64,000 nucleotides of DNA from Mobula hypostoma (taxonomy: Eukaryota): contig NC_086101.1 in NCBI RefSeq assembly GCF_963921235.1, positions 27,094,001 to 27,158,000 of the forward strand, read 5' to 3'. The notes beneath the pieces were generated by a model. It had not been told where the DNA came from and ran no database searches. It saw nothing but the letters and a program-made list of their open reading frames with translations. Made by a program: the position numbers and the translations under genes. The first letter of the stretch is position 1. Every line of letters begins with the position of its first letter. Positions 1 to 58,900 of the stretch are shown here, piece after piece.

Positions 1-300
1 ACATCCATCCTTTCGCCTTCCGTGCCCAATCGATAACTTAGGGTTACAAGAGCTTCCACTATCAGGCAAACCTGACTTGCCTATCCCAGACGGCGCGTCG
101 GTCAGCTTCTCCTCTTCGGCTTTGCTTACAAAAGTTGTCCCCAGTCCAATATCTTGGTCATGACCAGAGCACGAACTCGCGCTGTCATCAGCAGGTCTCG
201 TGTGACGTCTCCTGGAGCCCCGCTACAGTCCCCATCCGTGGCCAACAGAGGGCGCTTCGCCGCCGGAAGTGAAATCCCAAGCACTTGAAGTCGCTGAGTT
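1..300 (-). promoter_or_regulatory. CpG-rich promoter / 5' end of an unidentified gene running off the left edge
   Basis: CpG-rich stretch with an ETS/GABP motif CCGGAAGT at 263-270. The minus strand reads ACTTCCGGCGGCG, typical of housekeeping start sites. One minus frame is open from about 222 to the window edge but has no in-frame ATG, so the product is not identifiable. Confidence 0.5.
242..256 (+). promoter_or_regulatory. CTCF-like motif
   Basis: CCAACAGAGGGCGCT versus the CTCF core CCASYAGRKGGCRS (one mismatch). Confidence 0.55.
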
Positions 301-404
301 GGCACCTTAAGGTTCTGCTTTACTCAGACAATAACCCCTTCCTCGCTGTCCATTCAAAAGAGCAAATGCATCAAGATTTCAGTATTTTATGTGAACTTCC
401 TCCA

Positions 405-895
405 CGTCCTGGTCAGCCACATAGACGCCATGACCAAGAAGGTGCACCAACGCCTCTATTTCCTTAGAATGCTAACGGAATTGAGCATGTCTCCACTGAC
501 TCCCACCTCATAGAAATTATCCTAGCCGAATGCATCGGGGTTTGGTATGGCAACTGATCTGTCCAAGACAGCAGAAAATAGCAGGGAGTCTCAGTCTATC
601 ACGGAAACCAGCCTCCCCACGTGTGGCTTGTCTGCATTTCCGCCGCCTCGGTAAAGCAGCCAACATGATCAAAGATCCACCCATATTCTCTGTCCCCTCC
701 CTTTCCAATGAGGAAAAAGCTGAAAACACACACCACCGGGCTGAAAGGCAACTTCTATCCCACTGGTATAAGGCTTTTAACTCCTGTATGCTGAAAATGA
801 ACCCTTGACCTCACGGCCGTTGTAACTTTTTGTCTACCTGCATTGCATTTACTTTGTAATTGTAACACTTTATTCTGAGTTCTGTTCTTGTTTTA
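405..895 (+). mobile_element. Decayed Rex1/L2-type LINE 3' fragment
   Basis: 'aagaaggtgcaccaacgcctctatttccttaga' and the downstream 3' UTR resemble the better preserved minus-strand copy at 33690-34665. Confidence 0.6.
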
Positions 896-896
896 C

Positions 897-1300
897 CTCA
901 AAGTTGGGTGGCGGGGTAGAGGTACGTCTCTACCAAAGGCGCTTCTTCCCTCTGCTGACCTGCATGTCACCCTTGAGCAAGTTGTAACACCCGCTTAGCA
1001 CCACCCTACCACCCCACCAGGATCACGCCAAGCCACGGGAGCAGCTGGTGGATGGCCGTATGAGTTGCCGGTGCATATCACAAGACTTGGTTATGCCACC
1101 TTCGACGCCAGGCAGATAATCTCTGAAGCCTATTGATAATGGCTGGGGTCACTCGTCTTGTAAAGATACTGCCCAGAAGAAGGCAAAGGGAAATCACTTC
1201 TGTAGAAAAAAAAATTGTCAAGAACAATTATGGTCCTGGGAAGAACATGATCTCCACGTCGTACGATGCGGCATATAACGAACGAACGAGCGTACCTCGA
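897..1300 (+). mobile_element. RTE-related non-autonomous repeat
   Basis: Recurs at about 7545-7910 and 52180-52500. Carries a 'gaaggcaatggcaaaccacttct'-type motif resembling RTE/BovB-derived 5' segments. Confidence 0.55.
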
Positions 1301-1404
1301 AATAGGAACGTTCGGACGGCACGTACATCTATGATTCAATGTTTCCCAGTTTAAGTGACAATAATAATCAATAATTGTAATCTATCACACATTTCTCCAA
1401 TAGC

Positions 1405-1900
1405 CTAAATTGTGAAGGTCCTCCATTGGTCGGAACGACCATGAATACTGCGTCCTAGCGTCTGCAAGACATCAGGCCAGGGCAGAATGATATGGAGGGC
1501 AACCTGTTGCCCATGCAGCTGGTTCCCCCTCTCCACGCAACTGGTGAATCTAAAGGAACTGCAAGGACCGATTCAGTCTGGCACCAGCGGCCTCGCAGGA
1601 GTTCCCAGTCACCGTTAAACTCAACCTTAGCCAGGAGTTCCCAGTCACCGTTAAACTCAACCTTAGGAACTCCAGTTCCGGATTTTCCCTCAGGATTTAC
1701 TCCCGAAGCCTTCACCACGAGCGGTTATAGCTGCCAGTAACGAAGTTCCGAAATCAGTTTTTCTTCGCCTAGGTGAGCTACCAGCTACGGCTGACGAGCT
1801 CCGTCTGCGTGAAGCGACTGGTTTTCAGGCGCCAGTAACCCGCCTTTGCTTCCTATTCTTCTGTCAGTAGAAACGGTTCTGCCGGGCTGAGTAACTAAAC
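1405..1900 (+). mobile_element. RTE-like repeat with an internal 36-bp tandem duplication (1596-1666)
   Basis: caggagttcccagtcaccgttaaactcaaccttag occurs twice with period 36. Related sequence lies at about 15900-16500 and 60100-60590. Confidence 0.45.
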
Positions 1901-4649
1901 CACGTGTGAAGGCAAGGAGCTGGATTGGGTTGTCAAGAGGCTGTTTGACGCGCACGCCATTGGGAGCAGTGAATTGGTACTGGGAGCCTATCCCCACAAC
2001 ATCCCCCGACAGCCTTAGCGAACCAAGCCTTAAAGAATCTTCACGATTAAAGATCAAATCTGGATATATGCAGACTCCTGCTGTTTAGAACCAAGAATCA
2101 GTATCTCAGCATATGGGGTTAGACATTAAACACGGTGATGAGGCAAAACAGGTGGTGGTGGTGGTGGTCTGAATCCAGTATTCTTTACCGCAAAAGGCTG
2201 ATGAGGACAATTGGCTCAAGATATTTAAGAAAGAGACAGACAGATGTTTGGAAACGGTGGGAACAGAGAGATAGAGCTGAACCGTAGTTGTATTGAGTGA
2301 CATAGCAAGGTTCAAAGGAACAAATATTCTAAATCTTCCAGATTTAATTTCAGAAGAATTCCCTGTTACTCTTCTATCACAGAGGGCAAAAGAAAAATTT
2401 TAACTTTACAAAAATCCTGACTGAAATTTGCACAGGGAACTAACAAGAGGGAACTAACAAGACAGGGACTCGCAGGAGTCCATATAAAAGCGCACAGAAT
2501 CATGAAATCATTCCACAGATCAGAAAGTATCCTGCAGAGAGAGAAATTGGATTAATATTTCAATTCGGAGTCCCTTATGGAGGCTGGGCAATGACTTTAT
2601 GAGGTTTATAAAATTATGAGGGCCATAGTCCTGTTCCCAGGGTAGGGAGGAAACGTAAACTCAGACCATGAGAGGCCTGCGACGGGCATTTTCATGCCTT
2701 ACAAGGCGCAGATTGGAAGTCTATGGGGGGCGCCAGTCCTCCTTGCACAGACACTAGAACAATGTGTGGTTAAGTGCCTTGCTCAAGGACAAAAACACGC
2801 TGCCACAGCTTGGGCTGGAACTAGCGACCTTGAGATCATTAGACGAACGCCTTAACCACTTGGCCACGTGCCCAAGTTAGGGAACACCCAGGGTAGAGAA
2901 GACTAAAATTAGGGACGTTAGGTTTAAGGTGAGAGAGGAAAGATTTAAAAGGTACCCGAGGGGCAACTTTTTCCACATAGAGGGTAAAGGGCATATGGAA
3001 CAAGCTGCAAGATGAAATCATACAACTTTTCCTGCTTACCAAACATTTGGACAGGTGAATGGATAGGAACGGTTTAGGCGAATATGGAGGAAATGGGAGT
3101 AGCTCATGTAGTTAGCTTGGTTGGAAAGGATGAATTGGACTACAGGGCCTCTTTCTGTGCTGTATAACTCAATGAGGCTATCACTGCATTGAAATTCTTA
3201 AAAGCAGTATTTTGGTTATAGATTCCTTATGTCACTCGGAACTTGTTCAATTTATAATTAATTCCAGTTCATTCTTCCATTGGGAATGTATATTTCTCTT
3301 GAAATGCAGATGCTGAAAATCTGAGATAAAATGATGCTAAGTTGTATTTTTCTGCCTTCTACAGACATACCCTGACCTGTTATGTTGTTTTTTTTAGCAT
3401 CCCTAGTTTTTATGTCTTTTCTTGATTTTATAAGGCTTTCGGAGAACGCTGTATATTTCAAAAAGTCGTTCATGAAATGTTGACGGGGATATGACGAAAT
3501 TGCAGAACAGAAATATGTGGGGACCTATCTCAAGGTTGTATGGTACTGTTTGTCCAAGGGCATTGGGTTATTTATAGAACATACTGGAAAGGGAATAAAA
3601 GCCTGGATCTTATGGCAATTTCTCAACCTTTTGAATATTGGAATATCTTCAGCGGTGAATTGTATTAGTGCACTGCCCAAAGGAAGCTCGCTGCCAGTTA
3701 ACGAAAGATTAGCTTTATTTGTCACATGTATATCGAAACGTGAAATCATATAGTGAAGTGCATCTTTTGCGTCAAATCAAATCAGCGAAAGTTTTGCCGG
3801 CAGCAACCTTTAAGTATCGGTAGGCGCCCGGCGTCATTATCGCATGCCCACTATTTATTAGCCCTCATCCGAACATCTTTGGAATGTAGGAGGAAACAGG
3901 AGCACCCGGAGGAAACCCACGCAGTCTCAGGGAGAAAGTACAGACTCCTTACACACAGCGCTGGGAGTCGAACCCCGCTCAGTCATCACTGGAGCTGTTA
4001 AACGACTGAGCTATCCGCTACGCTAGCGTGCTGCCCCAATTGTTGCTGGGGTTGTGCTCAGCAAGGTCCTGCACACAGCAACATCAAAGTCGCCAGATTC
4101 CTTTTGCAACGCAACATATCCCTGAACATGTTTGGTGAATAAAGTTCTAAATATTGCAGAATATTGGCTTAGCTAGGCTCCGGGAATGTAGTTTCCCTGA
4201 TCTCTTAAAGAGTGACATGAGGATTTTTGAAGAGTTGAATGGGGCCTCAATTTAGTAACTCACCAATGAGGAAATTGAGGTGGAAAATGAAACTACATGG
4301 ATTGCTCTTACCTCCCTGCCTCTGGAAAGAAACTAACATGGTTCTTTCTTCACATCCTTTCCATGGGCCAGAAGGTTGGCAACACGCGCCGCAGGCTCAA
4401 GGCGATCTTCAGGGGGTGACGAGGATAGGATTTCAGTACAGGTGAACAGAAAGAACCCACTGACAGCCCCCAGCCTGAAGATCGGGGAAGGGCGGGTTTG
4501 GTAGAGAGGGGTAGGCAGAGGGTCTCTTGACAATGGTGTCTCTTCCCAGCAGTTCCGGCATTTTGCGATTAACCTATCGGAGCACGTCACCATCGCCCAG
4601 CCCTCATTGCCTTTGGCAACTCAGTTCTGAGACGTTTACGTAATTCACT

Positions 4650-4960
4650 ACAGGTGGGTGAGTGGGGGCAATTAGTGCTATGCGAGTTCGATCCCGGCCT
4701 CTGGTGTGTGTACGGAGTTTGTGTACGTTCTCCCCGTAACCCATGAGTTTCCCCGGGTGCTCCGCTTTCCTCCCACATCCCAAATACTTGCGGTCGGTGA
4801 GTCAATTGCCCCCGTGTGTGGGTGAGTGGTAGAATCTGTGAGGAGTATATGGGAATGTGGAGAGAATAAACTGAGATCGGTGTAATCTGGTGGTTGATGG
4901 TCGGCATGGACTCAATGGGTCGAAGGGCCTGTCCCCGTGCTGTATCTCCCCATCGCTCTC
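4650..4960 (+). mobile_element. tRNA-derived SINE (V-SINE/HE1-like)
   Basis: B-box-like gagttcgatccc, central 'gggtgctccgctttcctcccaca', and a LINE-like tail 'gggtcgaagggcctgt'. Other copies at about 3830-4040, 9060-9290, 19600-19850, 30170-30620 and 55695-56100. Confidence 0.65.
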
Positions 4961-5640
4961 TGATAGAATTCTGCCGGTGGAGTGAATTGGGTCATCAGGG
5001 AAATTGTCGTGCCTGACTTGAAGAATAACCCCTAATCTAACAGCTATTAGAGGAGCTTTAGGCAGAATATATAAATGTCCTGCTCCTCCGATCAGACCCT
5101 GTACCCCGGTAAAACATCCTTGTAAGGCTGAGAGAAGATTTTGAGCGGCCAGAGAGACCTTTAGCCATGTGCCTGTCTGGTATCGGGCTCGTGGACGGCC
5201 CTCTCATATACAGTACTGAAAGATTGATCTCCCGATCTGCCTCGTCGTGGCTCTTGTCCTTTATTTGTCTGCCTGTACCGCATTTTCTCTGTAACTGTAA
5301 CAAGAATGCATATTCTGTATTCTGTTTTCTTTTTACTGCTTGGTTGTACTTACACATGGAACGATAAGTTTGCATAAAACGCAAATCGATGCTTCTCACC
5401 GTATCTCGGTACACGTGACAATAATAAATCAATGCCAATAAATAAAGGGAAATATAAAAAATGCCTTGAATACGTGCTGAATTAGTTAGTTAATTAATGT
5501 TCTCCATTATGTACATCCTCATGTGTATTTGCCCGTGTTAAAGTGACGGGGTATATCCTCACAACTAGTCGTAGTATCGCGTTGGCAATATTCTGCTCAG
5601 ATTTTTGATCCTCAGTCCTTGGACCTCGGAGCTGAACGTT

Positions 5641-5656
5641 GCGCCATCTGCCGGAC
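5641..5656 (-). promoter_or_regulatory. CTCF-like motif
   Basis: Reverse complement of 5641-5654 is CCGGCAGATGGCGC. Confidence 0.55.
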
Positions 5657-6179
5657 GCCGTGATTCTCAGAATTCGTCAAACAACTGGCTTTCATTCATT
5701 CTGTCATGGTTATTATTCTTTAGATTTGTCGAATAAGCTCGGAAGAAAATGAATCTCATGAGTGTATATGGATATAGATACTTCAATAATAAATTTACTT
5801 TGAACTTTGTTTCACACACACCTTTGCACATGGGTCACGTCCTCCCACTACTTGTCATTTTATTTTTTTCAGAAAATAAGAATCCAAAAGGATTTTTGTC
5901 CAATGGGGAAGCAATCCTTTCAGGAATGGTGCTTTAAACACGCTGGAGGAAGTCAGGGTGCCGAGCAGCATTTGCGGAGGAAGATGGGGTGGTGGTGAGT
6001 CCGGAGAACCGTGGGCAAAGAACTAGGAGGGAGAAGATTAAATGGACACTCCTTGCAAGAAGCCGGAATGAATATGGTGGCCTCCCGATTCTATCCTGAT
6101 TATATCGCCACTCTCCTTCATTTTATACCATCTCACCGCCCCCCGTCTCCGCTCTGAATTAACCATATTGTCTCTCCGC

Positions 6180-6415
6180 TCTCAGTCCTGATGCAGGGCT
6201 TCGACCCGAAACCTCGACCGTTCCTTCCCACATGCGGCGGTGTGAGGAACAGAATGAAATCCGGTAAATGGAATCAGCAGTCCTGCCGAAGGGTTTCGGC
6301 ACGAAACGTCATCTGTACTCTTTTCCGTAGACGCTGCCTGGCCTGTTGAGTTCCTCCAGCCTTTTGTGTGTGCTGCTCGGATTTCCAGCATCTGCAGGTC
6401 TTCTCTTGTTTTTAA
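6180..6415 (+). mobile_element. Two tandem Penelope pseudo-LTR remnants with degenerate hammerhead cores
   Basis: cctgatgcagggcttcgacccgaaac and cctgccgaagggtttcggcacgaaacgtc, followed by the 'gacgctgcctggcctgttgagttcctccagc' tail shared with the PLE termini. Confidence 0.65.
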
Positions 6416-6932
6416 ATGGAATTAATACAAGGTGCAGTTTTGACTGGGGCGGACAGGATGGGTCAAACGGCACGGCCCTCTACTGTGATTGGACAGGGCT
6501 CTCGTCCAAACAGAACAGGGCAGCCCTCAGCTCCAAGGTGAATAATGCTTCCGCTCTGAGAAAACTCCCAAAACGTTAACTGCGTCTCCATTTCCGCAGC
6601 CACTGCTCGACCTGCTGAGTGTTTCCAGCATTTTCCGATTTGTTTCAGATTTGCATCAACAGTTTTGACGTCTGCACCAGCTGTACTCCGCGCCTTCCTT
6701 GTTTGCCTCCGGCCTGCAAGATAACCCATCCCAATACCCTGCCCAATTAAAAAAGTGAGGTATCGCCAGATTCGACCGCAGCTGTTTCTACCTCCCGCCC
6801 TGTAACTGAGCGAATGGTAATCGAGAGCCTCCACTCCAGAATAATCTCTTTAATTACATTCTCGCCGTTACCGAGGACTGGGGCTGTGGTTTGCACGAAG
6901 CGATTCTGCCTGCCCGTATTAAACGCCCTCAG

Positions 6933-7061
6933 CCGCCAGCGTCCCCGTATACGGGTCTCGCCCAAACCGCCTGTTCCAGGTCTATTTCGAATTGCCTCAG
7001 GGAAATGTTCCTCGCCGATATGTTCTGGAGATGGACCATTTGCTACATTGCAACACAAGAG
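6933..7061 (+). other. Candidate upstream exon of the Ig receptor gene (coding status unclear)
   Basis: ctcag acceptor and strong AG|gtgagt donor. All three frames are open. The phase-1 frame could join ATGAAATCCG|gt (6254-6263) to the V exon, but the peptide is not a signal peptide. Confidence 0.35.
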
Positions 7062-7929
7062 GTGAGTTTAAAGTTTGAAAGAATATCAAAAAATAATTAC
7101 TGCATTTCAAAGGTAGGACTGTAGAGAGAGCCATCTGTGTACTTTGTAAATAACATACTATGGAGAACTTTGAGTACAACTATGGTTGACAGCGTGAAGA
7201 GTAGTCTATGTTAAGGATGAAACCTATGTTAAGGATTAATTTTATTTGACACGTGTCCATCGAAACATACAGTGAAATGCGTCGTTTGTGTCAACGATCA
7301 ACACAGTCCGACGATATGGTGGTCTCCATGCTTCCGGCGCCAACATAGGCGTCCACAGTTTACAACCCGTCCGTCTTTAGGCGGGAAGAAAGCCGCGAGG
7401 GGAGAACGTACAAACCCCTTACAAACAGCGGCCGGAATTGAAAGCGCTAGGTTAACTGTTGCACTACCCTGGCTAGTGAAAAGGACTGAGAAATGGCAAA
7501 TGAAGTTCAGTCCTGGTAAATATGAGCTTATGCTCATATGAGGTGGAGATAGATGTTTAGCAAAGCAGATGTAAGGCACACCTTCCCTCCAGTAGCCTGC
7601 AGGTTACCCTAGCGCCTGCTTGGCCATTACCTCCCACCCCCCACCCCGATCAGGGTCATGGGAGCAGGTGGTGGATGGACGTATAAGAAGCTGATGCATA
7701 TCGGTAGTCGAGGTTTTTCAACCTGTGACGCCAGGCAGACAATCTCTGAAAAGTATTGATCATGGCTGGAGTCACCCATCCTGTAACGATATTGCCCAGA
7801 TGAAGGCAATGGCAAACCACTTCTGTCAAAAACTTTGCCAAGAACAATCATCATCATGGACAAGACCATTATCGTCCACGTCTTACGACATGACACCTAA
7901 TGATGATGATGACTGGACCTAGAGTTTAC

Positions 7930-8620
7930 ACCACGAACAGTAAGGACATTGGGAATACTGAGCAATGGACGAACTTCAGTGTGCATGTCTAAAGGTCCTT
8001 GAAGATTGTTGCACAGGCAGATAACATAGTTGAAAAGGAATATGGGATGCTGAGCTTCATTTGATGGTGCATTGAATACAAGAGTAGGGAGTTTGTGCTC
8101 CAACCTTATAAAACGTTAGCAGACTTCATCTGGAGTATTGCATGCATTTCTGGTAACCACATTATGGGAAAGGTATGACAGCACTGGAGAGGGTGCAGAG
8201 CAGATTCACCAGATATTGCCTCGGATGGAGCATTTTTGTTATGAGGAGAGATTGAACAGGCCGGGCCTGTTCTCCTGGAGTGGCATAAGTCAGAAGGAGA
8301 ATTATTGAGGTACATTAAATGATAATAAATAGGGTAGACTGCAGGGCATGATACCACTTACGGGGGTACATTAGCCCTGTAAGTCATATAATGATTTATC
8401 ATTTGAGGTGTAACTTTCTCACTCAGAGTGCAGTGAATACCTGGAACACAGGGCTTGAGAGACTGGTGAAAGTAAAGACACTGACTTTACTGAAGAATTG
8501 TCCAGACTAGCACTTGAATTGTGCAGGCATGCTGGGAGATGGGATTAATATGGATTGGTGGCTACTGATCAGTGTGACATGGTGAGCTGACTGGTCTGTT
8601 TCTGCACTGTTTGATCCTAC
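7930..8620 (+). mobile_element. Decayed CR1 LINE RT/3' fragment
   Basis: Typical CR1 3' ORF2 text (cagataacatagttgaaaaggaatatgggatgctg...; agagcagattcaccag) with many stops. Confidence 0.7.
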
Positions 8621-8631
8621 GCACCAGCCAC

Positions 8632-8995
8632 ATTGAGGTACAGACTCTATTGTGCATGAGTGGTATGGTGGTACAGACTCTATTGTGCACCAATGGTGTA
8701 GTGGTACAGACTCTAATGTGCAACTATGGTATAGTGGTGCAGAGTCTATTGTGCAACTGTGGTATAGTGTTACAGACTCTATTGTGCACCAGTGGTATAG
8801 TGATACAGAGTCTATTGTGCAACTGTGGTATAGTGTTACAGACTCTATCATGCACAAGTGGTATAGTGGTACAGACTCTATCGTGCACGAGTGGTATAGT
8901 GGTACAGACTCTATCGTGCACGAGTGGTATAGTGGTACAGACTCTATCGTGCACGAGTGGTATAGTGGTACAGATTCTATTGTGCACTTGTCATA
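8632..8995. repeat. 33-bp minisatellite, about 11 units
   Basis: Unit approximately agtggtatagtggtacagactctatcgtgcacg. The 11-aa periodicity is visible in four overlapping ORFs. Confidence 0.9.
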
Positions 8996-9591
8996 CAATG
9001 GATAGAGCTGCTGCTTCAGACTCCCAGCACTGTCTCTGCATGTAGTTTGCACTATCTTTTCATGACCATATGATTCCCTCGGATGCTTCAGTTTCCTCCC
9101 ATAACCCAGAGATGTGCAGTTCGGTGGGCTAAATGGCCACTGTAAATTGTCCCTAGTGTGAGGGTGAGGGGAAGTATCCCTGGGGAGGTGGCGGTGGGAG
9201 GTGTTGAGGAGAATGCAGGGAGATTAAATGTGCGGTTGGTTGTCAGCACAAACTTGGTCGGCTGCAGGGCCTGTTTCTGTGCTGTGTGACTCTGTTGGGA
9301 CCATCATGGTTTCTGAAGGGTTGGACATCAGATACAGTAATTGGAGGCTTGTTCTAAATAATAAACAAGGTCAGGTCTGTGGAGGAGAACATCTGCTGGT
9401 GTACGTTGGTTGGGGGTGGTGGGGGATTAGTGTTGAGAGATGTAACAGAAGAAACATGGTCTAGTAACTGCAAAGCACAGCAGATAATTTTTGGCTTTGT
9501 TTTGCTCAATTCTCTATCCATAACGATTGCCATAAATGAACATGATGCAGAAGTTGTGGATTCTTAAAGCAGCATTTTCAATTCTGTGCAG

Positions 9592-9954
9592 GTTGTGAGA
9601 CATCGGCCAGTCTGAGAGTACACCAGGCTCAAATGACTGGAGTCGTCAATCAGTCCGTCCTCTTCCCCGTTTCCTATGTGGCTGGATGCCAACATTATGT
9701 TAAGATCTCCTGGAGATACGAAGCCTTCCGAACCTCATTCCTGATATGGAGCTCCCTGAACGTTTCCAGTAAGTACAGCTGGCACAACTTTACCTGGCAT
9801 TCCTACAGTCAACGCACAACTTTTTTCCCTGAAAACGCTTCCCTGATTCTCCACAATCTGCAGCACAATGACAGCGGCATCTATCAAATAAAGATCAAGG
9901 GGAATTCATGGTCAGACACTGGGCGAGTCAAGCTAACCGTACTTGGGGAAGCAG
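9592..9954 (+). CDS. Ig V-type domain exon (CEACAM N-domain/CD2/HEPACAM-like, lacking the B-F disulfide)
   Basis: tgtgcag acceptor, CAG|gtaatg donor, 363 nt, phase 1-1. Peptide has SVLFPV (B strand), KISW (C-strand Trp) and FPENASLILHNLQHNDSGIYQI (E/F strands, Gln in place of Cys), with 5 N-glycosylation sequons. Confidence 0.85.
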
Positions 9955-10199
9955 GTAATGTGTATCTGATGTACAAATGGTCCTATTTGGGACATAGTTC
10001 ATGCTGCTTCACAAAGGATGGTATCAGGTTGATGTAGCACCTTCCATAAGCCAATGAGCACTTCTGAAGTGTAGTCAGGAACCTCACATTGTCTGAGCTA
10101 CCCTGAGGTCCATCTCAATGGGCATCAATGAAGAACCTATTAGCTTCTTCAACCTGGAATACTGGATGCAATTCTGATCTGTGAAGTCACAGACACAAG

Positions 10200-12350
10200 T
10201 GATTCTGCAGATAACAGGAATTCTGCAGATGCTGGAAATTCAAGCAACATACATCAAAGTTGCTGGTGAACGCAGCAGGCCAAGCAGCATCTATAGGAAG
10301 AGGTGCAGTCGACGTTTCAGGCCGAGACCCTTCGTCAGGACTAACTGAAGGAAGAGTGAGTAAGGGATTTGAAAGTTGGAGGGGGAGGGGGAGATCCAAA
10401 ATGATAGGAGAGGACAGGAGGGGGAGGGATAGAGCCAAGAGCTGGATGGGTGATAGGCAAAAGGGGCTACCAGAGGATCATGGGACAGGAGGTCCGGGAA
10501 GAAAGACAAGGTGGGGGGGTGACCCAGAGGATGGGCAAGAGGTATATTCAGAGGGACAGAGGGAGAAAAAGGGGAGTGAGAGAAAGAATGTGTGCATAAA
10601 AATGAGTAACAGATGGGGTACGAGGGGGAGGTGGGGCCTTAGCGGAAGTTAGAGAAGTCGATGTTCATGCCATCAGGTTGGAGGCTACCCAGACGGAATA
10701 TAAGATGTTGTTCCTCCAACCTGAGTGTGGCTTCATCTCCACAGTAGAGGAGGCCGTGGACAGACATGTCAGAATGGGAATGGGATGTGGAATTAAAATG
10801 TGTGGCCACTGGGAGATCCTGCTTTCTCTGGCGGACAGAGCGTAGATGTTCAGCAAAGCGGTCTCCCAGTCTGCGTCGGGTCTCACCAATATATAAAAGG
10901 CCACATCGGGAGCACCAGACGCAGTATATCACCCCAGTCGACTCACAGGTGAAGTGATGCCTCACCTGGAAGGACTGTTTGGGGCCCTGAATGGTGGTAA
11001 GGGAGGAAGTGTAAGGGCATGTGTAGCACTTGTTCCGCTTACACGGATAAGTGCCAGGAGGGAGATCAGTGGGGAGGGATGCGGGGGCGAATGGACAAGG
11101 GAGTTGTGTAGGGAGCGATCCCTGCGGAATGCAGAGAGAGGGGGGGGAGGGAAAGATGTGCTTAGTGGTGGGATCCCGTTGGAGGTGGTGGAAGTTACGG
11201 AGAATAATATGTTGGACCCGGAGGCTGGTGGGGTGGTAGTTGAGGACCAGGGGAACCCTATTCCTAGTGGGGTGGTGGGAGGATGGAGTGAGAGCAGATG
11301 TACGTGAAATGGGGGAGATACGTTTAAGAGCAGAGTTGATAGTGGAGGAAGGGAAGCCCCTTTCTTTAAAAAAGGAAGACATCTCCCTCGTCCTAGAATG
11401 AAAAGCCTCATCCTGAGAGCAGATGCGGCGGAGACGGAGGAATTGCGAGAAAGGGATGGCGTTTTTGCAAGAGACAGGGTGAGAAGAGGAATAGTCCAGA
11501 TAGCTGTGAGAGTCAGTAGGCTTATAGTAGACATCAGTGGATAAGCTGTCTCCAGAGACAGAGACAGAAAGATCTAGAAAGGGGAGGGAGGTGTCGGAAA
11601 TGGACCAGGTAAACTTGAGGGCAGGGTGAAAGTTGGAGGCAAAGTTAATAAAGTCAACGAGTTCTGTATGCGTGCAGGAAGCAGCGCCAATGCAGTCGTC
11701 GATGTAGCGAAGGAAAAGTGGGGGACAGATACCAGAATAGGCACGGAACATAGATTGTTCCACAAACCCAACAAAAAGGCAGGCATAGCTAGGACCCATA
11801 CGGGTGCCCATAGCTACACCTTTAGTTTGGAGGAAATGGGAGGAGCCAAAGGAGAAATTATTAAGAGTAAGGACTAATTCCGCTAGACGGAGCAGAGTGG
11901 TGGTAGAGGGGAACTGATTAGGTCTGGAATCCAAAAAGAAGCGTAGAGCTTTGAGACCTTCCTGATGGGGGATGGAAGTATATAAGGACTGGACATCCAT
12001 GGTGAAAATAAAGCGGTGGGGGCCAGGGAACTTAAAATCATCGAAAAGTTTAAGAGCGTGAGAAGTGTCACGAACATAGGTCGGAAGGGATAGAACAAGG
12101 GGTGATAAAACAGTGTCGAGGTATGCAGAAACGAGTTCGGTGGGGCAGGAGTAAGCTGAGACAATAGGTCGGCCAGGACAGGCAGGTTTGTGGATCTTGG
12201 GTAGGAGGTAGAAACGGGAAGTGCGGGGTGTGGGAACTATAAGGTTGGTAGCAGTGGATGGGAGATCCCCTGAGCGGATAAAGTCGGTGATGGTGTGGGA
12301 GACAATGGCCTGGTGCTCCTTAGTGGGGTCACGATCGAGGGGTAAATAAA
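10200..12350 (-). mobile_element. Penelope-like retroelement (5'-truncated RT + GIY-YIG endonuclease + 3' pseudo-LTR)
   Basis: Frame open from about 12348 to 10639: FYLLPKIHK, PGRPIVS, MDVQSLYTSIP, GVAMGTRMGPSYA, RYIDD, then VIYCVWCSRCGLLYIGETRRRLGDRFAEH (GIY-YIG). Confidence 0.93.
10306..10343 (-). ncRNA. Minimal type I hammerhead ribozyme (Penelope-associated)
   Basis: Minus strand TAGTC-CTGACGA-AGG gtctcgg CCT-GAAAC-GTC-GACTG: intact CUGANGA/GAAA core, stems I and II, palindromic ACGU stem III and a GUC cleavage triplet. Confidence 0.8.
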
Positions 12351-12351
12351 C

Positions 12352-12690
12352 TGTCCATCACCTCCCTCTGGTTTCCCACCTCCTTCTCTATATTCCATTG
12401 TCCACTGATCTCTCTTATCAGATTCCTCCTTCTTCTGCCCTTTGCTTTTTCCACCTATCACCTCCCAGCTTCTTACGTCATCCCCTTTCACACCCACCCA
12501 TCTTCCCCCTCACCTGGACTGACCTATCACCTGCCAGCTTTTCCTCCTCCCCCTACTTTCTTATTTTGGCTTTTGACCTTTTCCTTTCCTACCCTGTTGA
12601 AGGGTCTTGGCCAAAAACCGAATGTTCATTTCCCTGCATAGATGCCGCCTGACTAACTGAGTTGCTCCAGCATTTTGTGTGCGTTACGCT
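12352..12690 (+). mobile_element. Inverted, older Penelope pseudo-LTR abutting the truncated 5' end of the PLE
   Basis: Pyrimidine-rich body, degenerate core cctgttgaagggtcttggccaaaaac, and tail 'gatgccgcctgac...ccagcattttgtgtg'. Confidence 0.65.
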
Positions 12691-13486
12691 GTAGGAGAGA
12701 TGTGATTGTGCCGAAATAGACGCAGAGGAGGTTCGCCTAGATTAGAACACTGCAGTTCTTAGAGAGATCGGATGGGCTGGATTTGTATTCGCGGGAATGG
12801 AGGAGGTTGGTGGGGAAGCAAGCGTGGTGTACAAAATCATGAGGGGGTTAGACAGCAAGAATCATTTTCCCATGATGGGGAAACAATCTTTACTATGTTC
12901 TGTACCCTCTCAATACCTAAAGCAAGAGGGCATGGTTATAAATTGAGAGGTAGGATATTTAGAAGGGGATATGAGGGGTAGTGTTTCCACCCGGAACGTG
13001 GTTGGAATGTGGACGCACTGCTTGAGGGGTTGGTGGAGGGAAAGTCTCTCACAATATTTAAGCAGCATCGAGACAAGTACGTGAATCTTCCAAGGCATGA
13101 AAGGCCGTGGACCAAATGCAGGTAAATAGGATTAACATCGATAAGTGTCATGGTCGGTATGGGTGTGGGGGGGCCGTTTCCAAGCGGTAAAACTCTATGA
13201 TTTTAAATGTCTCAGCCAAGTTTACAGACAGCAAGGTGCAACGACAGCAGTGTGATCATGATCGGGTTGCTGTAGACCGGTGTAGCAGGTGATATAGCTA
13301 AAGAGTCATTTGAACAGCAGAGGATCTCAGTGAATGTCCCACCTCAGTGGAATCCTGACCAGCGGGGAAACTGTGCTTCGCACCGCCAAGCCACTGTGCT
13401 GCGAATGTTTACGTGCCGTAGAAATGCAAAGATACACTGTGGTTCTTCCTTCTAAAGAGCAAATTTTGGTTGTCTTTATTTTCTAG

Positions 13487-13626
13487 TGACCACGGAACAA
13501 TCTAACGGAAACCAGGATGCAAACAAGGTGTCTGAGTTTGTCAACCACATCAGAACTGTGAATATCATCAGGCTTATTCTGGGCTCTCTCCTCGTCCCTC
13601 TCTGCTTCATTTTGAAAGCTTTCTGA
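13487..13626 (+). CDS. Stalk/transmembrane terminal exon of the Ig receptor (Arg in TM, no cytoplasmic tail)
   Basis: tctttattttctag acceptor. Joined in phase 1 to the V exon it gives VTTEQSNGNQDANKVSEFVNHIRTVNIIRLILGSLLVPLCFILKAF-stop. Confidence 0.75.
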
Positions 13627-15222
13627 AACAGCACCTGATTACTCAGCTTCAAGTTGGTTTCAGACAGTACACAGTGACATATATCAATGTATGTGTGAGA
13701 ATGAGAGGGTGAGAGAGAGTCAGAGTGGCTTTAGAGTAAAATGTGTTTGATGGCTGGCGTGGACAAAGTGGCTGCTTCTATGCTCTTCCTCTTTGTTTTT
13801 GATTCTAAATCATGTCGTTTTAGGAATACAATTGTTAGAAATGTGCGTAACATCTAAGCTGTGGGGATTCATATTCAGTCCGGCAAAAAACCAGAAATAC
13901 CCCAAGCAGAATAATTATTTTATTTGGCTTTGTGTGGCTAATGGGGGGGGGGGGGCAATATAACCTAACTAAATTGGTTTATTAATGTCACGTGTACAGA
14001 TGGCCAGTGAAAACCTTTGCCTTGTATGCCAACCACAGAGATAATTTTGCAACATCAGGGCACAGCTTTCTCAATACGTACACCATGGGGAAGACTGGAT
14101 GGGTACATCTATTAAAAAATGCTATTTGGTTTGAAGCCAATGACCATTGTGAGCTGTAATTAATAGATTAAATTAAATTAGCTTTATTTGTCACATGTAC
14201 ATTGAAACACACAGTGAAATGCAGCATTTGTGCCAGCAGAGTCCGTGGAACTCAAAAGTTTAATGTAACATTTTGTGGTAATGCATTAGCCACTTTCTAG
14301 TCACTGTAGTTGATGGACGTCACCTTAATAGGTGCAGAGGAAGTTTTTAGCAAATACCATTGTCTCAACTTTCACACTCACTTGCTGCCCAATAAACTTG
14401 TCAGCCTTGTGGCTACAGAAATTGTAGAGCAAGTTCAGGCTCATCTTATCTTCCCTCTGTTGTGGTTATGACGAAGTGGTCAGTCAGCCCCTTTCATTTT
14501 TCAGCCTGAGGGGGAAGATAAGCCTGAGCTAAACTGTGTTGCATTTCAAAACACGCAGTAGGTCAGGGGCATCTGTGGAGAGACAGCTCAGAGATGCTTC
14601 ATTACAACTGGGAAAGGATGAAAACTATTAGTTTTAGGCTGCAGAGAGAGTTGGGGAGTGATGGAGAAGAGAACGGGGATACATTGCCATCAAAACTTGT
14701 TTATTGCTCTCTCATGTAAAGCCAGGAAATGCAGAAAATATTCAACAGGGCAGACAGCATCTGTGGGGAGAGAAATAGAACAAGCATTTTAAATCCAAGC
14801 TCTAAGCCACTTTATTACGTACACCGGTATACCTACTCGTCAATGTAAATATCTAATCAAACAATTATGTGGCAACAAGTTAAAGCATGCAGATATGGTC
14901 AATGGGGTTCAGTTGATGAGGTAGGAGAAATAATAACAGGGGACAAGGAGCTGGCAGATGAGCTAAATAAGTATTTTGCATCAGTTTTCACTGTGGAAGA
15001 CACTAGCACTGTGTCAGATATGGTACTGTGAAGGAAGAGAAGTGGATGCAGTTACTATCACAAGGGAGAAGGTGCTCAAAAAGCTGAAAGACCTAAAAGT
15101 ACTTAAGTCACTCGGACCAGATGAACTGCACCCTAGAGATTGTGGCTGCATTAGAAATGATCTGCAAGGTTTAATGGACTGCAAGGGTAAGGACGGAGAG
15201 CAGCCGAAATAAAGGACTTACA

Positions 15223-42117: not shown

Positions 42118-42452
42118 TCAGCCCGTTAGCAGGGGAAGGAAATCTGCAATGCTGTCCACATAGAAGTTGGGGACCATCCTCTGGCGGTCAAGGCACGTGC
42201 TCGTCATGTTGTCCTGTGCCTCCTGCAGGGTGGAGACACCCGTCAGAGTCAGCACCGTCTGCACCCCGCAGTTGGAGCCAAAGAGGATGTCCGTGTCCAG
42301 CCGGTCACCAATCATCAGTGTGCGGGCAGGGTCGAGGGGCTCGCCCGCTCCCCTCTCATTGATGCAGTCGAACATGAACCTGCTGGGCTTGCCGATGACT
42401 TCTGCCTTGCGGCCAGACGCTACCTCCACAGCTGCCGTCAGGCTGCCAGTGC
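42118..42452 (-). CDS. PDXP: Pyridoxal phosphatase (chronophin) exon 2
   Basis: ttctcctttacag acceptor; (G)TGSLTAAVEVASGRKAEVIGKPS...GDRLDTDILFG...LTG-stop (HAD motifs III and IV). Confidence 0.92.
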
Positions 42453-42900
42453 CTGTAAAGGAGAAAGGAATGAGATAGTCATTCCGATCAGGGTTACATC
42501 TCTCTCCCAACTCCTCCTCCTGCCCTGTCATCCTCATCTCTCAACAATAAATGCCAGAGACTGCAAATTAGCAACCTACAATCTCAATTGCATTATCTCA
42601 AAGCTTATCCCACGACATGAAAAGCTCCAGTTTAAAAATGCCTATTTTGCAAAAAGCTATTCTACTTGGTGAACTACTGATAGTTTAAACTTTATTAAGT
42701 TGAATTAAGGCTAATGAAGTCTGATAAACTTGTTGCTCTGTCCCCTCATTTTACCTAACTCAAGAATGTGACCTTGTTCCTTATTCTGCAAGTTAACACA
42801 GTCAGCAAGTATTAGAACAAATTGAGACTTAAATTAGTAGTAGGCCATTCGTCTTTTGAATCTTTGGGACAAGATCATTGTGGAATTGACTAACCACAAA

Positions 42901-46140: not shown

Positions 46141-46860
46141 CAGTGGCATGCAAAAGTTTGGGCACCCTTGGTCAAAATTTCTGTTACTGTGAATAGCTAA
46201 GTGAGTAAAAGATGAACTGATTTCCAAAAGGTATAAAGTTAAAGATGACACATTTCTTTAATATTTTAAGCAAGAAAACTTTATTTCCATCTTTTAGTTT
46301 CAAAATAACAAAAAATGAAAAGGGCCCAATGCAAAAGTTTGGGCACCCTGCATGGCAGTACTGAGTAACACCCCCTTTGGCAAGTATCACAGCTTGTAGA
46401 CGCTTTTTGTAGCCAGCCAAGAGTCTTTCAATTCTTGTTTGGGGGATTTTCACCCATTCTTCCTTGCAAAAGGCTTCTAGTTCTGAGAGATTCTTGGGCC
46501 GTCTTGCATGCACTGCTCTTTTGTGGTCTATCCACAGATTCTCGATGATGCTTAGGTCGGGGGACTGTGAGGGCCATGGCAAAGCCTTCAGCTTGTGCCT
46601 CTTGAGGTAGTCCATTGTGGATTTTGAGGTGCGTTTAGGATCATTATCTTGTAGAAGCCATCCTCTTTTCATCTCAGCTTTTTTTTTAATATTACAGAGG
46701 GTGTGATGTTTGCTTCTAGAATTTGCTGGTATTTAATTGAATTCATTCTTCCCTCTACCAGTGAGATATTCCCCGTGCCACTGGCTGCAACACAAGCCAA
46801 AAGCATGATCGATCCACCCCCGTACCTAACAGTTGGAGAGGTGTTCTTTTCATGAAATTC
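46141..46860 (-). mobile_element. Tc1/mariner transposon 3' half
   Basis: TA|cagtggcatgcaaaagtttgggcacc TIR with an internal direct repeat near 46330. Peptides GGGSIML...A and QDNDPK...SPDLSIIENLW...KGGVTQY; frameshift at the poly-T run near 46680. Confidence 0.9.
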
Positions 46861-56700: not shown

Positions 56701-58094
56701 TCGGGGAAGTTAGGGGGCAGTAATATCAAATGCAATAACAGACATGCCACAGGAGGTTTACACAATCCAGCAGCGGTTATATTAACCGGAGTAACAGACA
56801 AAATGTTGGAGGAACTCTAAAGGTCAGGCAGCATTTATGGAGAGGAATAGAGTCAATGCTTCTGACTAAGATCCTTCATCAGGCTCGAAACATTGGCTAT
56901 TTCTCTCCACAGACCAGGGGATTCCAAGCGCTTTTTTTTTTTTAAAATGAGGGGGACCCCTACCATTAACTGAGCAGTCCATGGACCCCCGGTTGGGAGC
57001 CCTTGCCACAGATGATGGCTTATTTGCCAAGTTCTTCCAGCAATCTGCACGTTACTCTGGATTTGCAGCATCTGCAGAATTGCATGTTAAGATATTAACA
57101 TGCCAGGTACCTATAATAAACCCAGCAGCATACTGGTGACACATCCTAGATGTTATCTTGTGGCATGGCCTCAAGCAGGCTCCACACAAAGCTCTTTGCC
57201 CCTCCACCTACTGTTAGACCAGCAATATCTGTTGAAGCAAATTCCACATACCCACTCTGCACTGGAGGGTCTTTGAATTTCAGACCCAACTGACAAGAAC
57301 TAGCTAGCCTCACGCCAGCTATACTGCAAGGCTTTGCAATTTGGAAAGAGATTTACTGGGCCACGATACAGTACAAGCTTGTGCTTTGTGTGTCAGGCAG
57401 ATCAGGTCATACACTACTACATCAAAAAGGTAAAAGAGACCAATGCAGAGTATGGTGTTGCAGTTAACTGAGAAAGGGCAGCACAGATAGGCAAGGGTGG
57501 AAAAGAGTTCAATAGTACAAGAGTACACAAGAGCACACGAGGCTGCAGACCTATCCAGCCCCATCATAGGCAGAACCCTTCCCACTATCATGAACATTTC
57601 CAAGAGGCCATGCCACAAGACAACATCCCTCACCAAAGACCCTCACCATCTGGACATGCCCTCTTCACGTTAGCATCATCACAGAGCTACAGTCCCACAC
57701 GCCATTCCACAGCTTCTTTCTCTCCACTACCAGATTTAGGGGTAGTCCATGAACACTACTTATCGTAGCGTTATGTTTTTGCACAGGTCCTGAACAACAC
57801 AGAAAATGTTGGAGGGACTCAGCGGGTCAAGCAGCATCTGCAGAGGGAAAAAGGCAGCCTACATTTCGATAGAATCCTTTCCCTCCTTAGATGATGCCTG
57901 ACCTGCTGAGTTCCACCAGCATTTTTGTGCCTCTTGCTCCACATTTCCAACACCCGCAGAACCGGTCTCACAAGTTTCAACTCACCTAAATAACACATTT
58001 GAGCCTTACGAGGGAAGGGAGATGAGTGGGTGGACTTAAGCCAGTGCAAAGCGGATACGTGAACCCGGAGCCGCAATAAAGGATGTCCGCTCAC

Positions 58095-58695
58095 CTGGGA
58101 CCGCTGTGCCTCCTACCAATGGGTGCCAGGGATCTGGGTCGGTAGCCACAAAGAGACACCGGGGGTCCCGCAGGTAGCTGCATGCCTTGGCCAGCCGCAC
58201 GAAGCTGAAGTGTTCGTCGTAGCCGACCAACACAGCGCCGACCTCGGGGTCCAGGGCACAAATGGACACAGGCAGCTCCTCGGCATCCTGTGGGCCACCC
58301 GTCACCCGCAAACCGGCTGCCTGCAGTTCGCCGCACAGGGTTTCGCTGCCCAGCACATAGACCTTGCGGCGGAGGCGAGCGATGTCGCGCAGATAGAGGG
58401 CCGAGCAGTAGCCGGTGACGTAGACTTGCTCGGGCTCAGCCGCTAAACCCAGAGTCCCGAGCTTGGCCACTACCGCGTCCCGGGGGCGGCTGCAGTTGTT
58501 GCTGACGAAGTAGACGCGCTTGCCCCGAGCCTTCAGCCCAAGCAGCACCTCGGCCGCCCCGCGAATCGCCCGCGGCCCGTTCCACAGCACGCCGTCGCAG
58601 TCCAACAGGAAGGTGTCCACGGCCGCAACCAGCTCCCGGCCACAAGACCCGATGCTCAACTGCCGGCAGCAAAAACCACCCGGCAAGGCGGCCAT
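58095..58695 (-). CDS. PDXP: Pyridoxal phosphatase (chronophin) exon 1
   Basis: LLDCDGVLWNG (motif I) and VSNN (motif II). VGYDEHFSF and ATDPDPWHPL match PDXP rather than PGP. CAG|gtgagc phase-1 donor. Confidence 0.93.
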
Positions 58696-58699
58696 TCCT

Positions 58700-58900
58700 G
58701 AATTATCCAGCTCTCAGACCAACCTCTTACCCACCAACACCAATCAGATCCGACGCCCGCTCAACCTGCTTCGCCGGTTGGGGTTTTAGAAGCAAAGAGG
58801 CGGGATTACGATTCTGTGAGCCAATCGTTTATTCCAAGAGGGTGACAGGCTGTTTAACCAATGGGAATCGAAATTCCAGACAACTGCGCCTTTCGCTCAG
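58700..58900 (-). promoter_or_regulatory. PDXP: PDXP promoter region
   Basis: CpG-rich, with CCAAT boxes near 58820 and 58858. Confidence 0.55.

What the first reader, a model, noticed from the sequence alone, without database searches (positions are those of the whole stretch)
9592..13626. Orphan activating-type Ig receptor: Cys-less CEACAM/CD2-like V domain plus an FcR-gamma-type transmembrane Arg, next to RPS18
The spliced product is one heavily glycosylated V domain, a short stalk and TVNIIRLILGSLLVPLCFIL with essentially no tail. The N-x-x-R transmembrane pattern resembles that of FcR-gamma-coupled receptors (LILRA, FCAR, NKp46, GPVI). Those receptors use C2 domains, while disulfide-less V domains typify the CEACAM/CD2 families. 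RPS18 is an extended MHC class II gene in mammals, so this may be an MHC-linked innate receptor of a type not yet described in cartilaginous fish. A GPI-signal reading of the C-terminus (CD48/CD58-like) is the alternative.
Basis: partly seen in the sequence, partly recalled or inferred. Interest (0 to 1): 0.75.

Follow-up and report, generated by a model that had tools for sequence, protein, structure and literature searches.

The report
Ray single-V receptor with membrane arginine
This is a real, transcribed ray gene for a small surface protein with one antibody-like domain and an arginine in its membrane anchor, the hallmark of immune receptors that signal through a partner chain. It has unnamed counterparts in a sawfish and a shark, and the ray copy shows several signs of decay.

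Summary
A V-set exon (9582-9954, not 9592) and a stalk/TM/stop exon (13487-13626) belong to a three-exon gene. The product is 189 aa: leader, one V domain without the canonical disulfide and with five N-glycosylation sequons, a stalk, TVNIIRLILGSLLVPLCFIL, then KAF.

It is not an orphan. Orthologues exist in sawfish (77% identity, same TRIM / gene / RPS18 order) and in Mustelus (55%). All three keep N-I-I-R in the membrane segment. The V domain belongs to a wide family that databases label CEACAM-like or HEPACAM-like, and many of its paralogues carry ITIM/ITSM tails.

An NxxR membrane segment is the published signature of FcR-gamma-coupled receptors, so an adaptor-coupled activating receptor is the best reading. 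It is inferred, not shown. A GPI anchor is unlikely.

The ray copy looks impaired:
- The V-exon acceptor reads AA.
- A 10-nt deletion shifts the frame and shortens the TM end.
- The only RNA joint seen into 13487 comes from a cryptic donor at 9768 and removes half the V domain.
- No contig covers 9880-9954.

MHC linkage cannot be tested here. The scan's unchecked notes list other CD2/CEACAM-type IgV genes in this genome.

The parts
6630..7004 (+). Inferred 5' untranslated part of exon 1. The start is approximate.
   Evidence: The X1 contig carries 432 letters upstream of its first match at 9582, and the X2 contig carries 297. Counting 432 back from the donor at 7061 gives about 6630.
7005..7061 (+). 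Coding part of the leader exon: MFLADMFWRWTICYIATQE, phase 0, followed by the donor gtgagt.
   Evidence: tblastn of sawfish P0001 (REMFLAAAFWSVCFVTAQ) hits 6984-7058. Sequence read. The sawfish donor is at the same place. The upstream extension in the sawfish model is out of frame in the window.
9580..9581 (+). AA where the V-exon acceptor AG should be.
   Evidence: Window ...cattttcaa|ttctgt against sawfish ...cctttcag|ttctgc. RNA-like contigs nevertheless begin to match at 9582.
9582..9954 (+). V-set (N-type) domain exon, 373 nt, ending in phase 1, with five N-glycosylation sequons and no canonical disulfide.
   Evidence: Pfam V-set. AlphaFold pLDDT 92.7. Same length and boundaries as the sawfish exon, 82.5% nt identity, dN/dS 0.25. 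Contigs cover 9582-9879.
9769..9774 (+). Cryptic donor GTAAGT inside the V exon, used in RNA. The joint 9768|13487 is in frame and removes 62 codons.
   Evidence: X4 contig record 25 lies on 9682-9768 and 13487-13604. X1 records 1, 2 and 7 form the matching branch. Translation. Sawfish has GGGTAATT here.
9887..9892 (+). AATAAA hexamer inside the V exon (codons Q-I-K). Contigs of two runs end 8-9 nt before it.
   Evidence: Sequence. X1 and X2 contigs end at 9878 and 9879, and depth is 0 over 9888-10084 in all four runs. Any role is a conjecture.
10200..12350 (-). Penelope-like retroelement (reverse transcriptase and GIY-YIG ORF at 10639-12000) that fills much of intron 2.
   Evidence: ORF with ...GVIYCVWCSRCGLLYIGETRRRLGDRFAEHL. 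Summed contig depth here is 1e4 to 3e5 in all runs, as expected of a repeat family.
13487..13626 (+). Last coding exon: stalk, TM segment and three-residue tail, with stop TGA at 13624-13626.
   Evidence: Acceptor ttttctag, phase 1. Contigs begin exactly at 13487 (X1 record 7, X4 record 25). Homologous to the last exon of sawfish and Mustelus.
13561..13572 (+). Codons for N-I-I-R, the NxxR motif at the outer end of the membrane segment.
   Evidence: AAT ATC ATC AGG. Identical NIIR in sawfish P0001 and Mustelus P0005/P0151.
13611..13612 (+). Site of a 10-nt deletion relative to sawfish. It shifts the frame, so the C-terminus is ...CFILKAF instead of ...SFTAALVGNFRK.
   Evidence: DNA alignment A3. 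Mustelus has the long form ...SFVALFVDMFLK, so the ray state is derived.
13627..13891 (+). 3' untranslated region, at least this far.
   Evidence: X1 contig record 7 runs unbroken over 13487-13891.

Best explanation
The stretch is the ray orthologue of an uncharacterised shark-and-ray gene (sawfish LOC127585852, Mustelus LOC144496832). It lies between a TRIM gene and RPS18.

It encodes a type I membrane protein. The parts are a leader, one glycosylated V-set domain of the CEACAM/HEPACAM-like kind that lacks the canonical disulfide, a short stalk, a membrane helix with a conserved Asn-x-x-Arg at its outer end, and a tail of 3-5 residues.

The most likely mechanism is this. The V domain binds a ligand. 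The membrane arginine pairs with the membrane aspartate of an ITAM-bearing adaptor of the FcR-gamma/CD3-zeta type, which supplies the signal. The gene would then be the activating counterpart of the ITIM/ITSM-tailed paralogues of the same V-domain family.

Shown: gene structure, transcription, orthology, synteny, conservation of NIIR, and purifying selection on the V exon. Inferred: adaptor pairing, the activating role and the ligand.

In this ray the copy carries derived defects and may be weakened or dying:
- an AA acceptor
- a frameshifted, shortened TM end
- a charged leader core
- use of a cryptic donor in RNA
For: - V-set domain.
- Orthologues at 77% and 55% identity, with the same three-exon layout and GT-AG boundaries in sawfish.
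- Collinear flanks, with RPS18 downstream in both species.
- The three sequences form a well-supported clade (99/91).
- dN/dS of the V exon is 0.25.
- NIIR is identical in three species, and the orthologues end in basic residues after 22 residues following the Arg.
- The NxxR membrane type is documented as the FcR-gamma-associating type in mammals, birds and Xenopus, and was tested by co-expression (PMC2413239, PMC6557307, PMC4536121).
- Family members with ITIM/ITSM tails occur in the same taxa, among them Mobula P0175 (SEYAGI), Callorhinchus P0021, Hemitrygon P0025 and Mustelus P0030.
- RNA-like contigs show the exon 1 to 9582 joint and use of the 13487 acceptor, with no depth on unique intron sequence.
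Against:
- The other features reported for LRC-type NxxR segments are missing in the window: the DYT motif and an acidic residue at the inner end.
- The Ig domain is V-set, not the C2 type of LRC receptors.
- NxxR members of the family in gar and lungfish do not group with this gene, so a single origin of the motif is not shown.
- In the ray, the full V to TM joint was not seen.
- The acceptor reads AA.
- The membrane segment is five residues shorter after a frameshift and contains a proline.
- No protein product of this gene was found for any Mobula in the databases searched, although Mobula paralogues are present.
Confidence: 0.5

Rival explanations
1. In this ray the gene is a transcribed pseudogene or null allele. 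The family-level function may hold in sawfish and sharks, but here no working protein is made.
For: - AA replaces the acceptor AG.
- A 10-nt frameshifting deletion at the end of the TM is derived relative to sawfish and Mustelus.
- The leader core is interrupted by Asp and Arg, unlike both orthologues.
- The only joint seen into exon 3 removes 62 codons of the V domain. No contig covers 9880-9954. Run X2 has the V exon but no exon 3.
- The window's tree branch is 0.23 against 0.07 for sawfish.
- No Mobula product for this gene appears in the protein searches.
Against: - The reading frame is open through all three exons.
- dN/dS is 0.25.
- The excess of ray-specific changes, 19 against 10, is not significant (p = 0.14).
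- The exon 1 to V joint is made at the proper place in RNA.
- The shortened TM still has about 20 residues.
- Contig holes prove nothing at depth 5.
Confidence: 0.3
2. It is a non-signalling surface protein, either a decoy or an adhesion molecule. The single V domain binds a ligand or a pathogen, and the membrane arginine serves another purpose, such as assembly with a non-ITAM partner or retention control.
For: - A 2026 preprint proposes single-IgV, tail-less transmembrane CEACAM1-like proteins in turtles as a new kind of decoy (PMC13278318).
- The closest fold matches among reviewed proteins are VSTM5, HEPACAM2 and HEPACAM, which are adhesion-type molecules.
- Gar and lungfish family members combine NxxR with 40-45 residue tails.
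Against: - Asn and Arg inside a membrane segment have been kept since before sharks and rays diverged. Such conservation is usually explained by a partner helix.
- In every system tested, the NxxR type pairs with FcR-gamma.
Confidence: 0.12
3. The hydrophobic C-terminus is a GPI-attachment signal, so the mature protein is a lipid-anchored V domain like CD48 or CD58.
For: The ray C-terminus is short and ends three residues after the hydrophobic run. CD48 V domains appear among profile and fold matches.
Against: - By my own reading of the sequence, no site upstream of the hydrophobic run has small residues at both the cleavage position and two residues after it (...SEFVNHIRTVNIIR...).
- The orthologues end in NFRK and MFLK, as stop-transfer sequences do.
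- NIIR would be discarded with a cleaved signal, yet it is invariant in three species.
- No GPI predictor was available, so this is reasoning, not a test.
Confidence: 0.06

Closest known systems
FcR-gamma-coupled receptors with an NxxR membrane segment (LILRA2, FcalphaRI, NKp46, GPVI, OSCAR; Xenopus XFL and SLAM-like receptors)
   Same: N-x-x-R at the outer end of the membrane helix and a very short tail without motifs. ITIM-bearing relatives exist in the same family.
   Different: The Ig domain is a single V-set domain without the canonical disulfide, not C2-type domains. The DYT motif and the inner acidic residue are absent in the ray. No adaptor was tested. The host is a cartilaginous fish, for which I found no description of this membrane type.
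CEACAM family N domains (CEACAM1, 5, 6, 8) and the CEACAM-related genes reported in frogs, reptiles and fishes
   Same: A V-like domain without the canonical disulfide that shares the E-F strand motif (family consensus ...FPENASLLL..LQ.NDSG.Y against CEA ...YPNASLLIQNIIQNDTGFY). Frog relatives in the hit list are labelled CEACAM3-like. The family mixes activating and inhibitory members.
   Different: There are no IgC2 A/B domains, no ITIM/ITSM or ITAM tail and no GPI signal. The neighbours are TRIM, RPS18 and a HAD phosphatase, not the CEACAM-locus markers listed in PMC3628338. The profile match covers only the second half of the domain.
VSTM5, HEPACAM and HEPACAM2
   Same: Best fold matches among reviewed proteins (TM-score 0.75-0.78, 20-25% identity). 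VSTM5 is also a protein of about 200 aa. NCBI labels relatives HEPACAM-like.
   Different: Identity is too low to claim orthology. Their membrane segments and gene neighbourhoods were not compared here. HEPACAM proteins are more than twice as long (416-491 aa).
CD2/SLAM family (SLAMF5, SLAMF6, CD48, 2B4)
   Same: The family profile matches the V domains of SLAMF5 and SLAMF6 over nearly their full length. The best Atlas cluster carries the 2B4 family in 23% of its members. Xenopus SLAM-like receptors use NxxR membrane segments.
   Different: The membrane-proximal C2 domain that defines the family is absent. Scores are no better than for CEACAM, CAR or JAML.

Membership tests
NxxR-type (FcR-gamma-associating) activating Ig receptors | Asn-x-x-Arg at the extracellular end of the membrane segment | tested here: met
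   NIIR at 13561-13572. Identical in sawfish and Mustelus.
NxxR-type (FcR-gamma-associating) activating Ig receptors | Short cytoplasmic tail without tyrosine motifs | tested here: met
   KAF in the ray. Sawfish ends ...NFRK and Mustelus ...MFLK.
NxxR-type (FcR-gamma-associating) activating Ig receptors | Accessory features reported for LRC members: a DYT motif before the TM and acidic residue(s) at its inner end (PMC6557307) | tested here: not met
   The window has ...SEFVNHIRTV before the motif and ...CFILKAF after it. Only Mustelus has an inner Asp.
NxxR-type (FcR-gamma-associating) activating Ig receptors | Physical and functional association with FcR-gamma | not testable with these tools
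It needs co-expression experiments.
CEACAM family | N-terminal IgV-like domain without the canonical disulfide, carrying the conserved E-F strand motif | tested here: met
   No B-strand or F-strand Cys. The profile hits CEA, CEACAM1 and CEACAM6 N domains, with a best domain score of 27.8 bits over positions 69-114.
CEACAM family | IgC2-type A/B domains, and/or an ITIM/ITSM or ITAM tail, or a GPI anchor | tested here: not met
   Three exons only, with the stop in the TM exon.
CEACAM family | Location in the conserved CEACAM neighbourhood (ATP1A3, LIPE, CNFN, PAFAH1B3 and others; PMC3628338) | tested here: not met
   The neighbours are TRIM (sawfish), RPS18 and a HAD phosphatase.
CD2/SLAM family | A V domain followed by a membrane-proximal C2 domain | tested here: not met
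   No second Ig exon lies between 9954 and 13487 or in the orthologues.
GPI-anchored IgSF proteins (CD48/CD58-like) | A C-terminal signal with small residues at the cleavage site and two positions on, a polar spacer, and a hydrophobic end without a basic stop-transfer | tested here: inconclusive
   By inspection no suitable site was found, and the orthologues end in basic residues. No GPI predictor was run.
Extended-MHC-linked receptor | Linkage to MHC class I or II genes, or to several framework genes of the region | tested here: inconclusive
   RPS18 is the only such marker in the 64 kb. Its other neighbour is a PDXP/PGP-type gene.

The most novel reading that the evidence does not exclude
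The NxxR adaptor-coupling membrane module was already in use before cartilaginous and bony vertebrates split. In sharks and rays it sits on a CEACAM/HEPACAM-like single V domain, encoded between a TRIM gene and RPS18. That would make this gene an ancient activating partner of the ITIM-bearing members of the V family, and a receptor class not yet described in cartilaginous fish.
Probability: 0.35. Interest if true: 0.55.

Novelty: new member of a known kind. Interest (0 to 1): 0.38.

Why it matters
According to the papers I could read, receptors with an NxxR membrane segment have been traced in mammals, birds and amphibians. A conserved example in sharks and rays would push the module, and by implication FcR-gamma-type coupling, back to the base of jawed vertebrates. 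It would also add a fourth Ig family to those that use the module, after LRC, FCRL and CD2/SLAM.

The gene offers a simple test object: one domain, one helix and no tail. Its position beside RPS18, conserved between ray and sawfish, makes it easy to follow across genomes.

The ray copy also offers a small case study. A cryptic donor and a lost acceptor appear to be taking an immune gene apart while its frame is still open.

Tried and rejected
- The word-indexed protein search with the V exon found nothing. With the sawfish protein it found only itself. The exhaustive search and the alignment search were what worked.
- Folding without an alignment gave a poor model (pLDDT 47).
- Foldseek against the PDB gave only generic V domains such as PD-L1, CAR and sodium-channel beta subunits, so it does not settle the family.
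- Pfam on all 35 family domains gave only generic V-set or I-set matches.
- I tested whether NxxR members share one origin. They do not group on the V-domain tree: three changes are needed, and the gar and lungfish rows sit on long branches.
- Other copies in the window: tblastn of the V and TM exons found none.
- Paper searches for NxxR or FCER1G in sharks returned nothing useful.
- No DNA was available for the Mustelus locus. The look-up for the Mustelus ITIM paralogue P0030 was not sent because the queue was full.
- No complex prediction was run, because no adaptor sequence from a cartilaginous fish was in hand.
It is out of phase with the leader exon and is not the boundary seen in RNA.
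Full report
**What is in the sequence.** Between 9582 and 9954 the plus strand holds an open exon. Its product matches the Pfam V-set model above the curated cut-off (E 3.1e-07, 31 bits against 26). With an alignment of 35 relatives it folds as a V-type Ig domain at mean pLDDT 92.7. A fold without an alignment was poor. The two cysteines that normally bridge strands B and F are absent, both here and in every relative aligned. The domain carries five N-x-S/T sequons. A second exon starts at 13487 after ttttctag. It is in phase 1, as is the end of the V exon at 9954 (cag|gtaatg). It reads VTTEQSNGNQDANKVSEFVNHIRTVNIIRLILGSLLVPLCFILKAF and then stops at 13624-13626.

**Corrected gene model.** The exhaustive protein search found two close relatives:
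- P0001, uncharacterised LOC127585852 of the sawfish Pristis pectinata, 77% identical.
- P0005/P0151, LOC144496832 of the shark Mustelus asterias, 55% identical. One isoform is labelled 'HEPACAM family member 2-like'.

Mapping P0001 on the window revealed a leader exon, ATG 7005 to 7061 (MFLADMFWRWTICYIATQE), followed by gtgagt. The sawfish acceptor is ...cctttcag|TTCTGC, which corresponds to window position 9582. The leader exon ends in phase 0, so joining it to 9592 shifts the frame and meets a stop after seven further codons. Joining it to 9582 gives an open 189-codon frame. The N-terminal extension in the sawfish model is out of frame in the window, so the conserved MFLA... is the likely start.

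**RNA evidence.** Four runs of the same species label behave as RNA. They have no depth on unique intron sequence (9297-9493, 9888-10084, 12843-13433), and their contigs break at splice sites.
- Contigs of X1 and X2 begin to match exactly at 9582 and carry 432 and 297 further 5' letters. That fits an exon 1 running from about 6630 to 7061.
- X2 covers 9582-9879 without a break.
- An X4 contig lies on 9682-9768 and 13487-13604, a joint from an internal donor (cca|GTAAGT at 9769) to the 13487 acceptor.
- In X1 the same joint is implied. One contig ends at 9768, a second starts 30 letters earlier and runs on through the exon, and a third covers 13487-13891 with a 30-letter overhang. That is the pattern of a branch in a 31-mer graph.

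The 9768|13487 joint is in frame but removes 62 codons, the whole second half of the V domain. X2 has the V exon but no depth on exon 3. The contigs stop 8-9 nt before an AATAAA that lies within the exon (9887-9892). This could mean premature polyadenylation or just thin coverage at depth 5, and I cannot tell which. The end-of-V to TM joint therefore rests on the sawfish model, whose exons map with GT-AG boundaries at the homologous places, and on the Mustelus protein, which continues from the V domain into the TM segment.

**Orthology and selection.**
- The sawfish locus is collinear with the window from about 0.2 kb to 19.5 kb. It has the same order: a TRIM gene on the minus strand, this gene, then RPS18 on the minus strand.
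- On a V-domain tree, window plus sawfish (99/90) and then Mustelus (99/91) form a well-supported clade.
- Between window and sawfish the V exon has dS 0.52, dN 0.13 and dN/dS 0.25, so it has been under purifying selection for most of that time.

**The membrane segment.** All three species have N-I-I-R at the outer end of the hydrophobic run. The orthologues continue for 22 residues after the Arg and end in NFRK or MFLK.

The literature describes an 'NxxR' membrane type as the conserved feature of FcR-gamma-associating receptors (LILRA2, PIR-A, NKp46, GPVI, OSCAR, FcalphaR). The same type occurs in Xenopus FCRL-like and CD2/SLAM-like receptors. In 293T cells a Xenopus receptor of this type needed FcR-gamma to reach the surface (PMC2413239, PMC6557307, PMC4536121). 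That is the basis for the proposed mechanism, and nothing here tests it. Other features reported for LRC members, a DYT motif and an inner acidic residue, are absent from the ray sequence.

A GPI signal is unlikely for three reasons:
- By inspection, no suitable cleavage site precedes the hydrophobic run.
- The orthologues end in basic residues.
- A cleaved signal would not be expected to keep Asn and Arg unchanged in both sharks and rays.

No GPI predictor was available.

**The family.** The gene is not an orphan. The exhaustive search found 173 relatives at E <= 0.001, in the following taxa:
- rays: Hemitrygon, Hypanus, Mobula
- sharks: Scyliorhinus, Hemiscyllium, Heterodontus, Heptranchias, Mustelus
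- chimaera, gar and lungfish
- frogs (labelled CEACAM3-like) and a salamander
- turtles and birds

Many have ordinary membrane segments and tails with ITIM or ITSM motifs. Examples are Callorhinchus P0021 (IVYAMI), Hemitrygon P0025 (VEYDKI), Mustelus P0030 (LTYSFL) and Mobula P0175 (SEYAGI). A few others carry NxxR, namely gar P0090 (NVIRLVLSVLIPLFCYFLL, much like the ray segment) and lungfish P0022. They do not group with this gene on the tree.

A profile of the family finds the N domains of CEA, CEACAM1 and CEACAM6 among its best solved matches, through the ...YPNASLLIQN..QNDTG.Y stretch. SLAMF5, SLAMF6, CD48, CAR and JAML score at similar levels. Fold search ranks VSTM5, HEPACAM2 and HEPACAM first. 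'CEACAM/HEPACAM-like V domain' is as precise as the evidence allows. The gene fails the CEACAM tests of domain layout, tail and neighbourhood. CEACAM-related genes in cartilaginous fish are already on record (PMC3628338, PMC5112662). In the papers I could search, I found no description of a tail-less NxxR member.

**State of the ray copy.** Several derived features point towards loss of function.
1. The acceptor dinucleotide before 9582 is AA where sawfish has AG. RNA is still joined at 9582, so either the RNA donors or the other haplotype carry G, or a GT-AA intron is spliced.
2. A 10-nt deletion between 13611 and 13612 shifts the frame, which replaces ...SFTAALVGNFRK with ...CFILKAF and shortens the segment by five residues. 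Mustelus has the long form, so the ray state is derived.
3. The leader core is interrupted by Asp and Arg, unlike both orthologues.
4. A strong cryptic donor inside the V exon is used.
5. The ray branch on the tree is three times the sawfish branch (0.23 against 0.07). The count of lineage-specific changes, 19 against 10, is not significant (p = 0.14).
6. No product of this gene from any Mobula turned up in the protein searches, although Mobula paralogues did. Earlier notes of this scan call the genome a devil ray.

Against decay, the frame is open throughout and dN/dS is low.

**Context.** RPS18 runs from about 29.7 kb to 19.4 kb on the minus strand. Beyond it lies a HAD-type phosphatase gene of the PDXP/PGP kind, with exons at 58039-58713 and 42121-42540 on the minus strand, plus transposon remains. 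No other marker of the MHC region is in the window, so linkage cannot be judged. Earlier unchecked notes of this scan list a CD2/CEACAM-type single-IgV gene with ITIM/ITSM-like motifs about 5 Mb upstream on the same piece, and other such genes elsewhere in the genome. These are leads for the inhibitory partner and were not tested here.

**Verdict.** This is a real, transcribed, three-exon gene. That reading remains untested. The gene belongs to a known kind of receptor and to an existing though unnamed family, and the copy in this window may not work. Interest is moderate.

Noticed in passing
window 10200-12350 (ORF 10639-12000, minus strand): A Penelope-like retroelement with reverse transcriptase and a GIY-YIG endonuclease motif fills intron 2. 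Summed contig depth on it is 1e4 to 3e5 in all four RNA-like runs, so the repeat family is abundant in them. The sawfish also has Penelope-like sequence in the same intron.
   Followed up: partly
window 8637-8987: A tandem repeat of 33 bp in 10.6 copies (89% matches) lies in intron 1. It is open in several frames and produces spurious ORFs of 117-181 aa.
   Followed up: partly
window 58039-58713 and 42121-42540, minus strand: Two exons of a HAD-family phosphatase gene (Hydrolase_6 E 2.2e-27; Hydrolase_like E 3.3e-17), of the PDXP/PGP type, lie 15.5 kb apart. This gene is the neighbour of RPS18 on its 5' side.
   Followed up: partly
window 46187-46732, minus strand: A DDE_3 transposase remnant (E 1.9e-07) lies inside the long intron of the phosphatase gene.
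   Followed up: no
window 9580-9581: The V-exon acceptor reads AA in the assembly, yet RNA contigs are joined exactly at 9582. This is either a polymorphic splice-site variant or a rare GT-AA intron.
   Followed up: partly
L001 1-2572, minus strand (sawfish): A TRIM gene (RING, B-box, PRY/SPRY) lies directly upstream of the sawfish orthologue. By collinearity its ray counterpart would begin just off the left end of the window.
   Followed up: no
P0090/P0160 (Lepisosteus oculatus): A gar relative has a membrane segment, ELINVIRLVLSVLIPLFCYFLL, that is strikingly like the ray one, but followed by a 45-residue tail. Another isoform (P0159) lacks the segment.
   Followed up: partly
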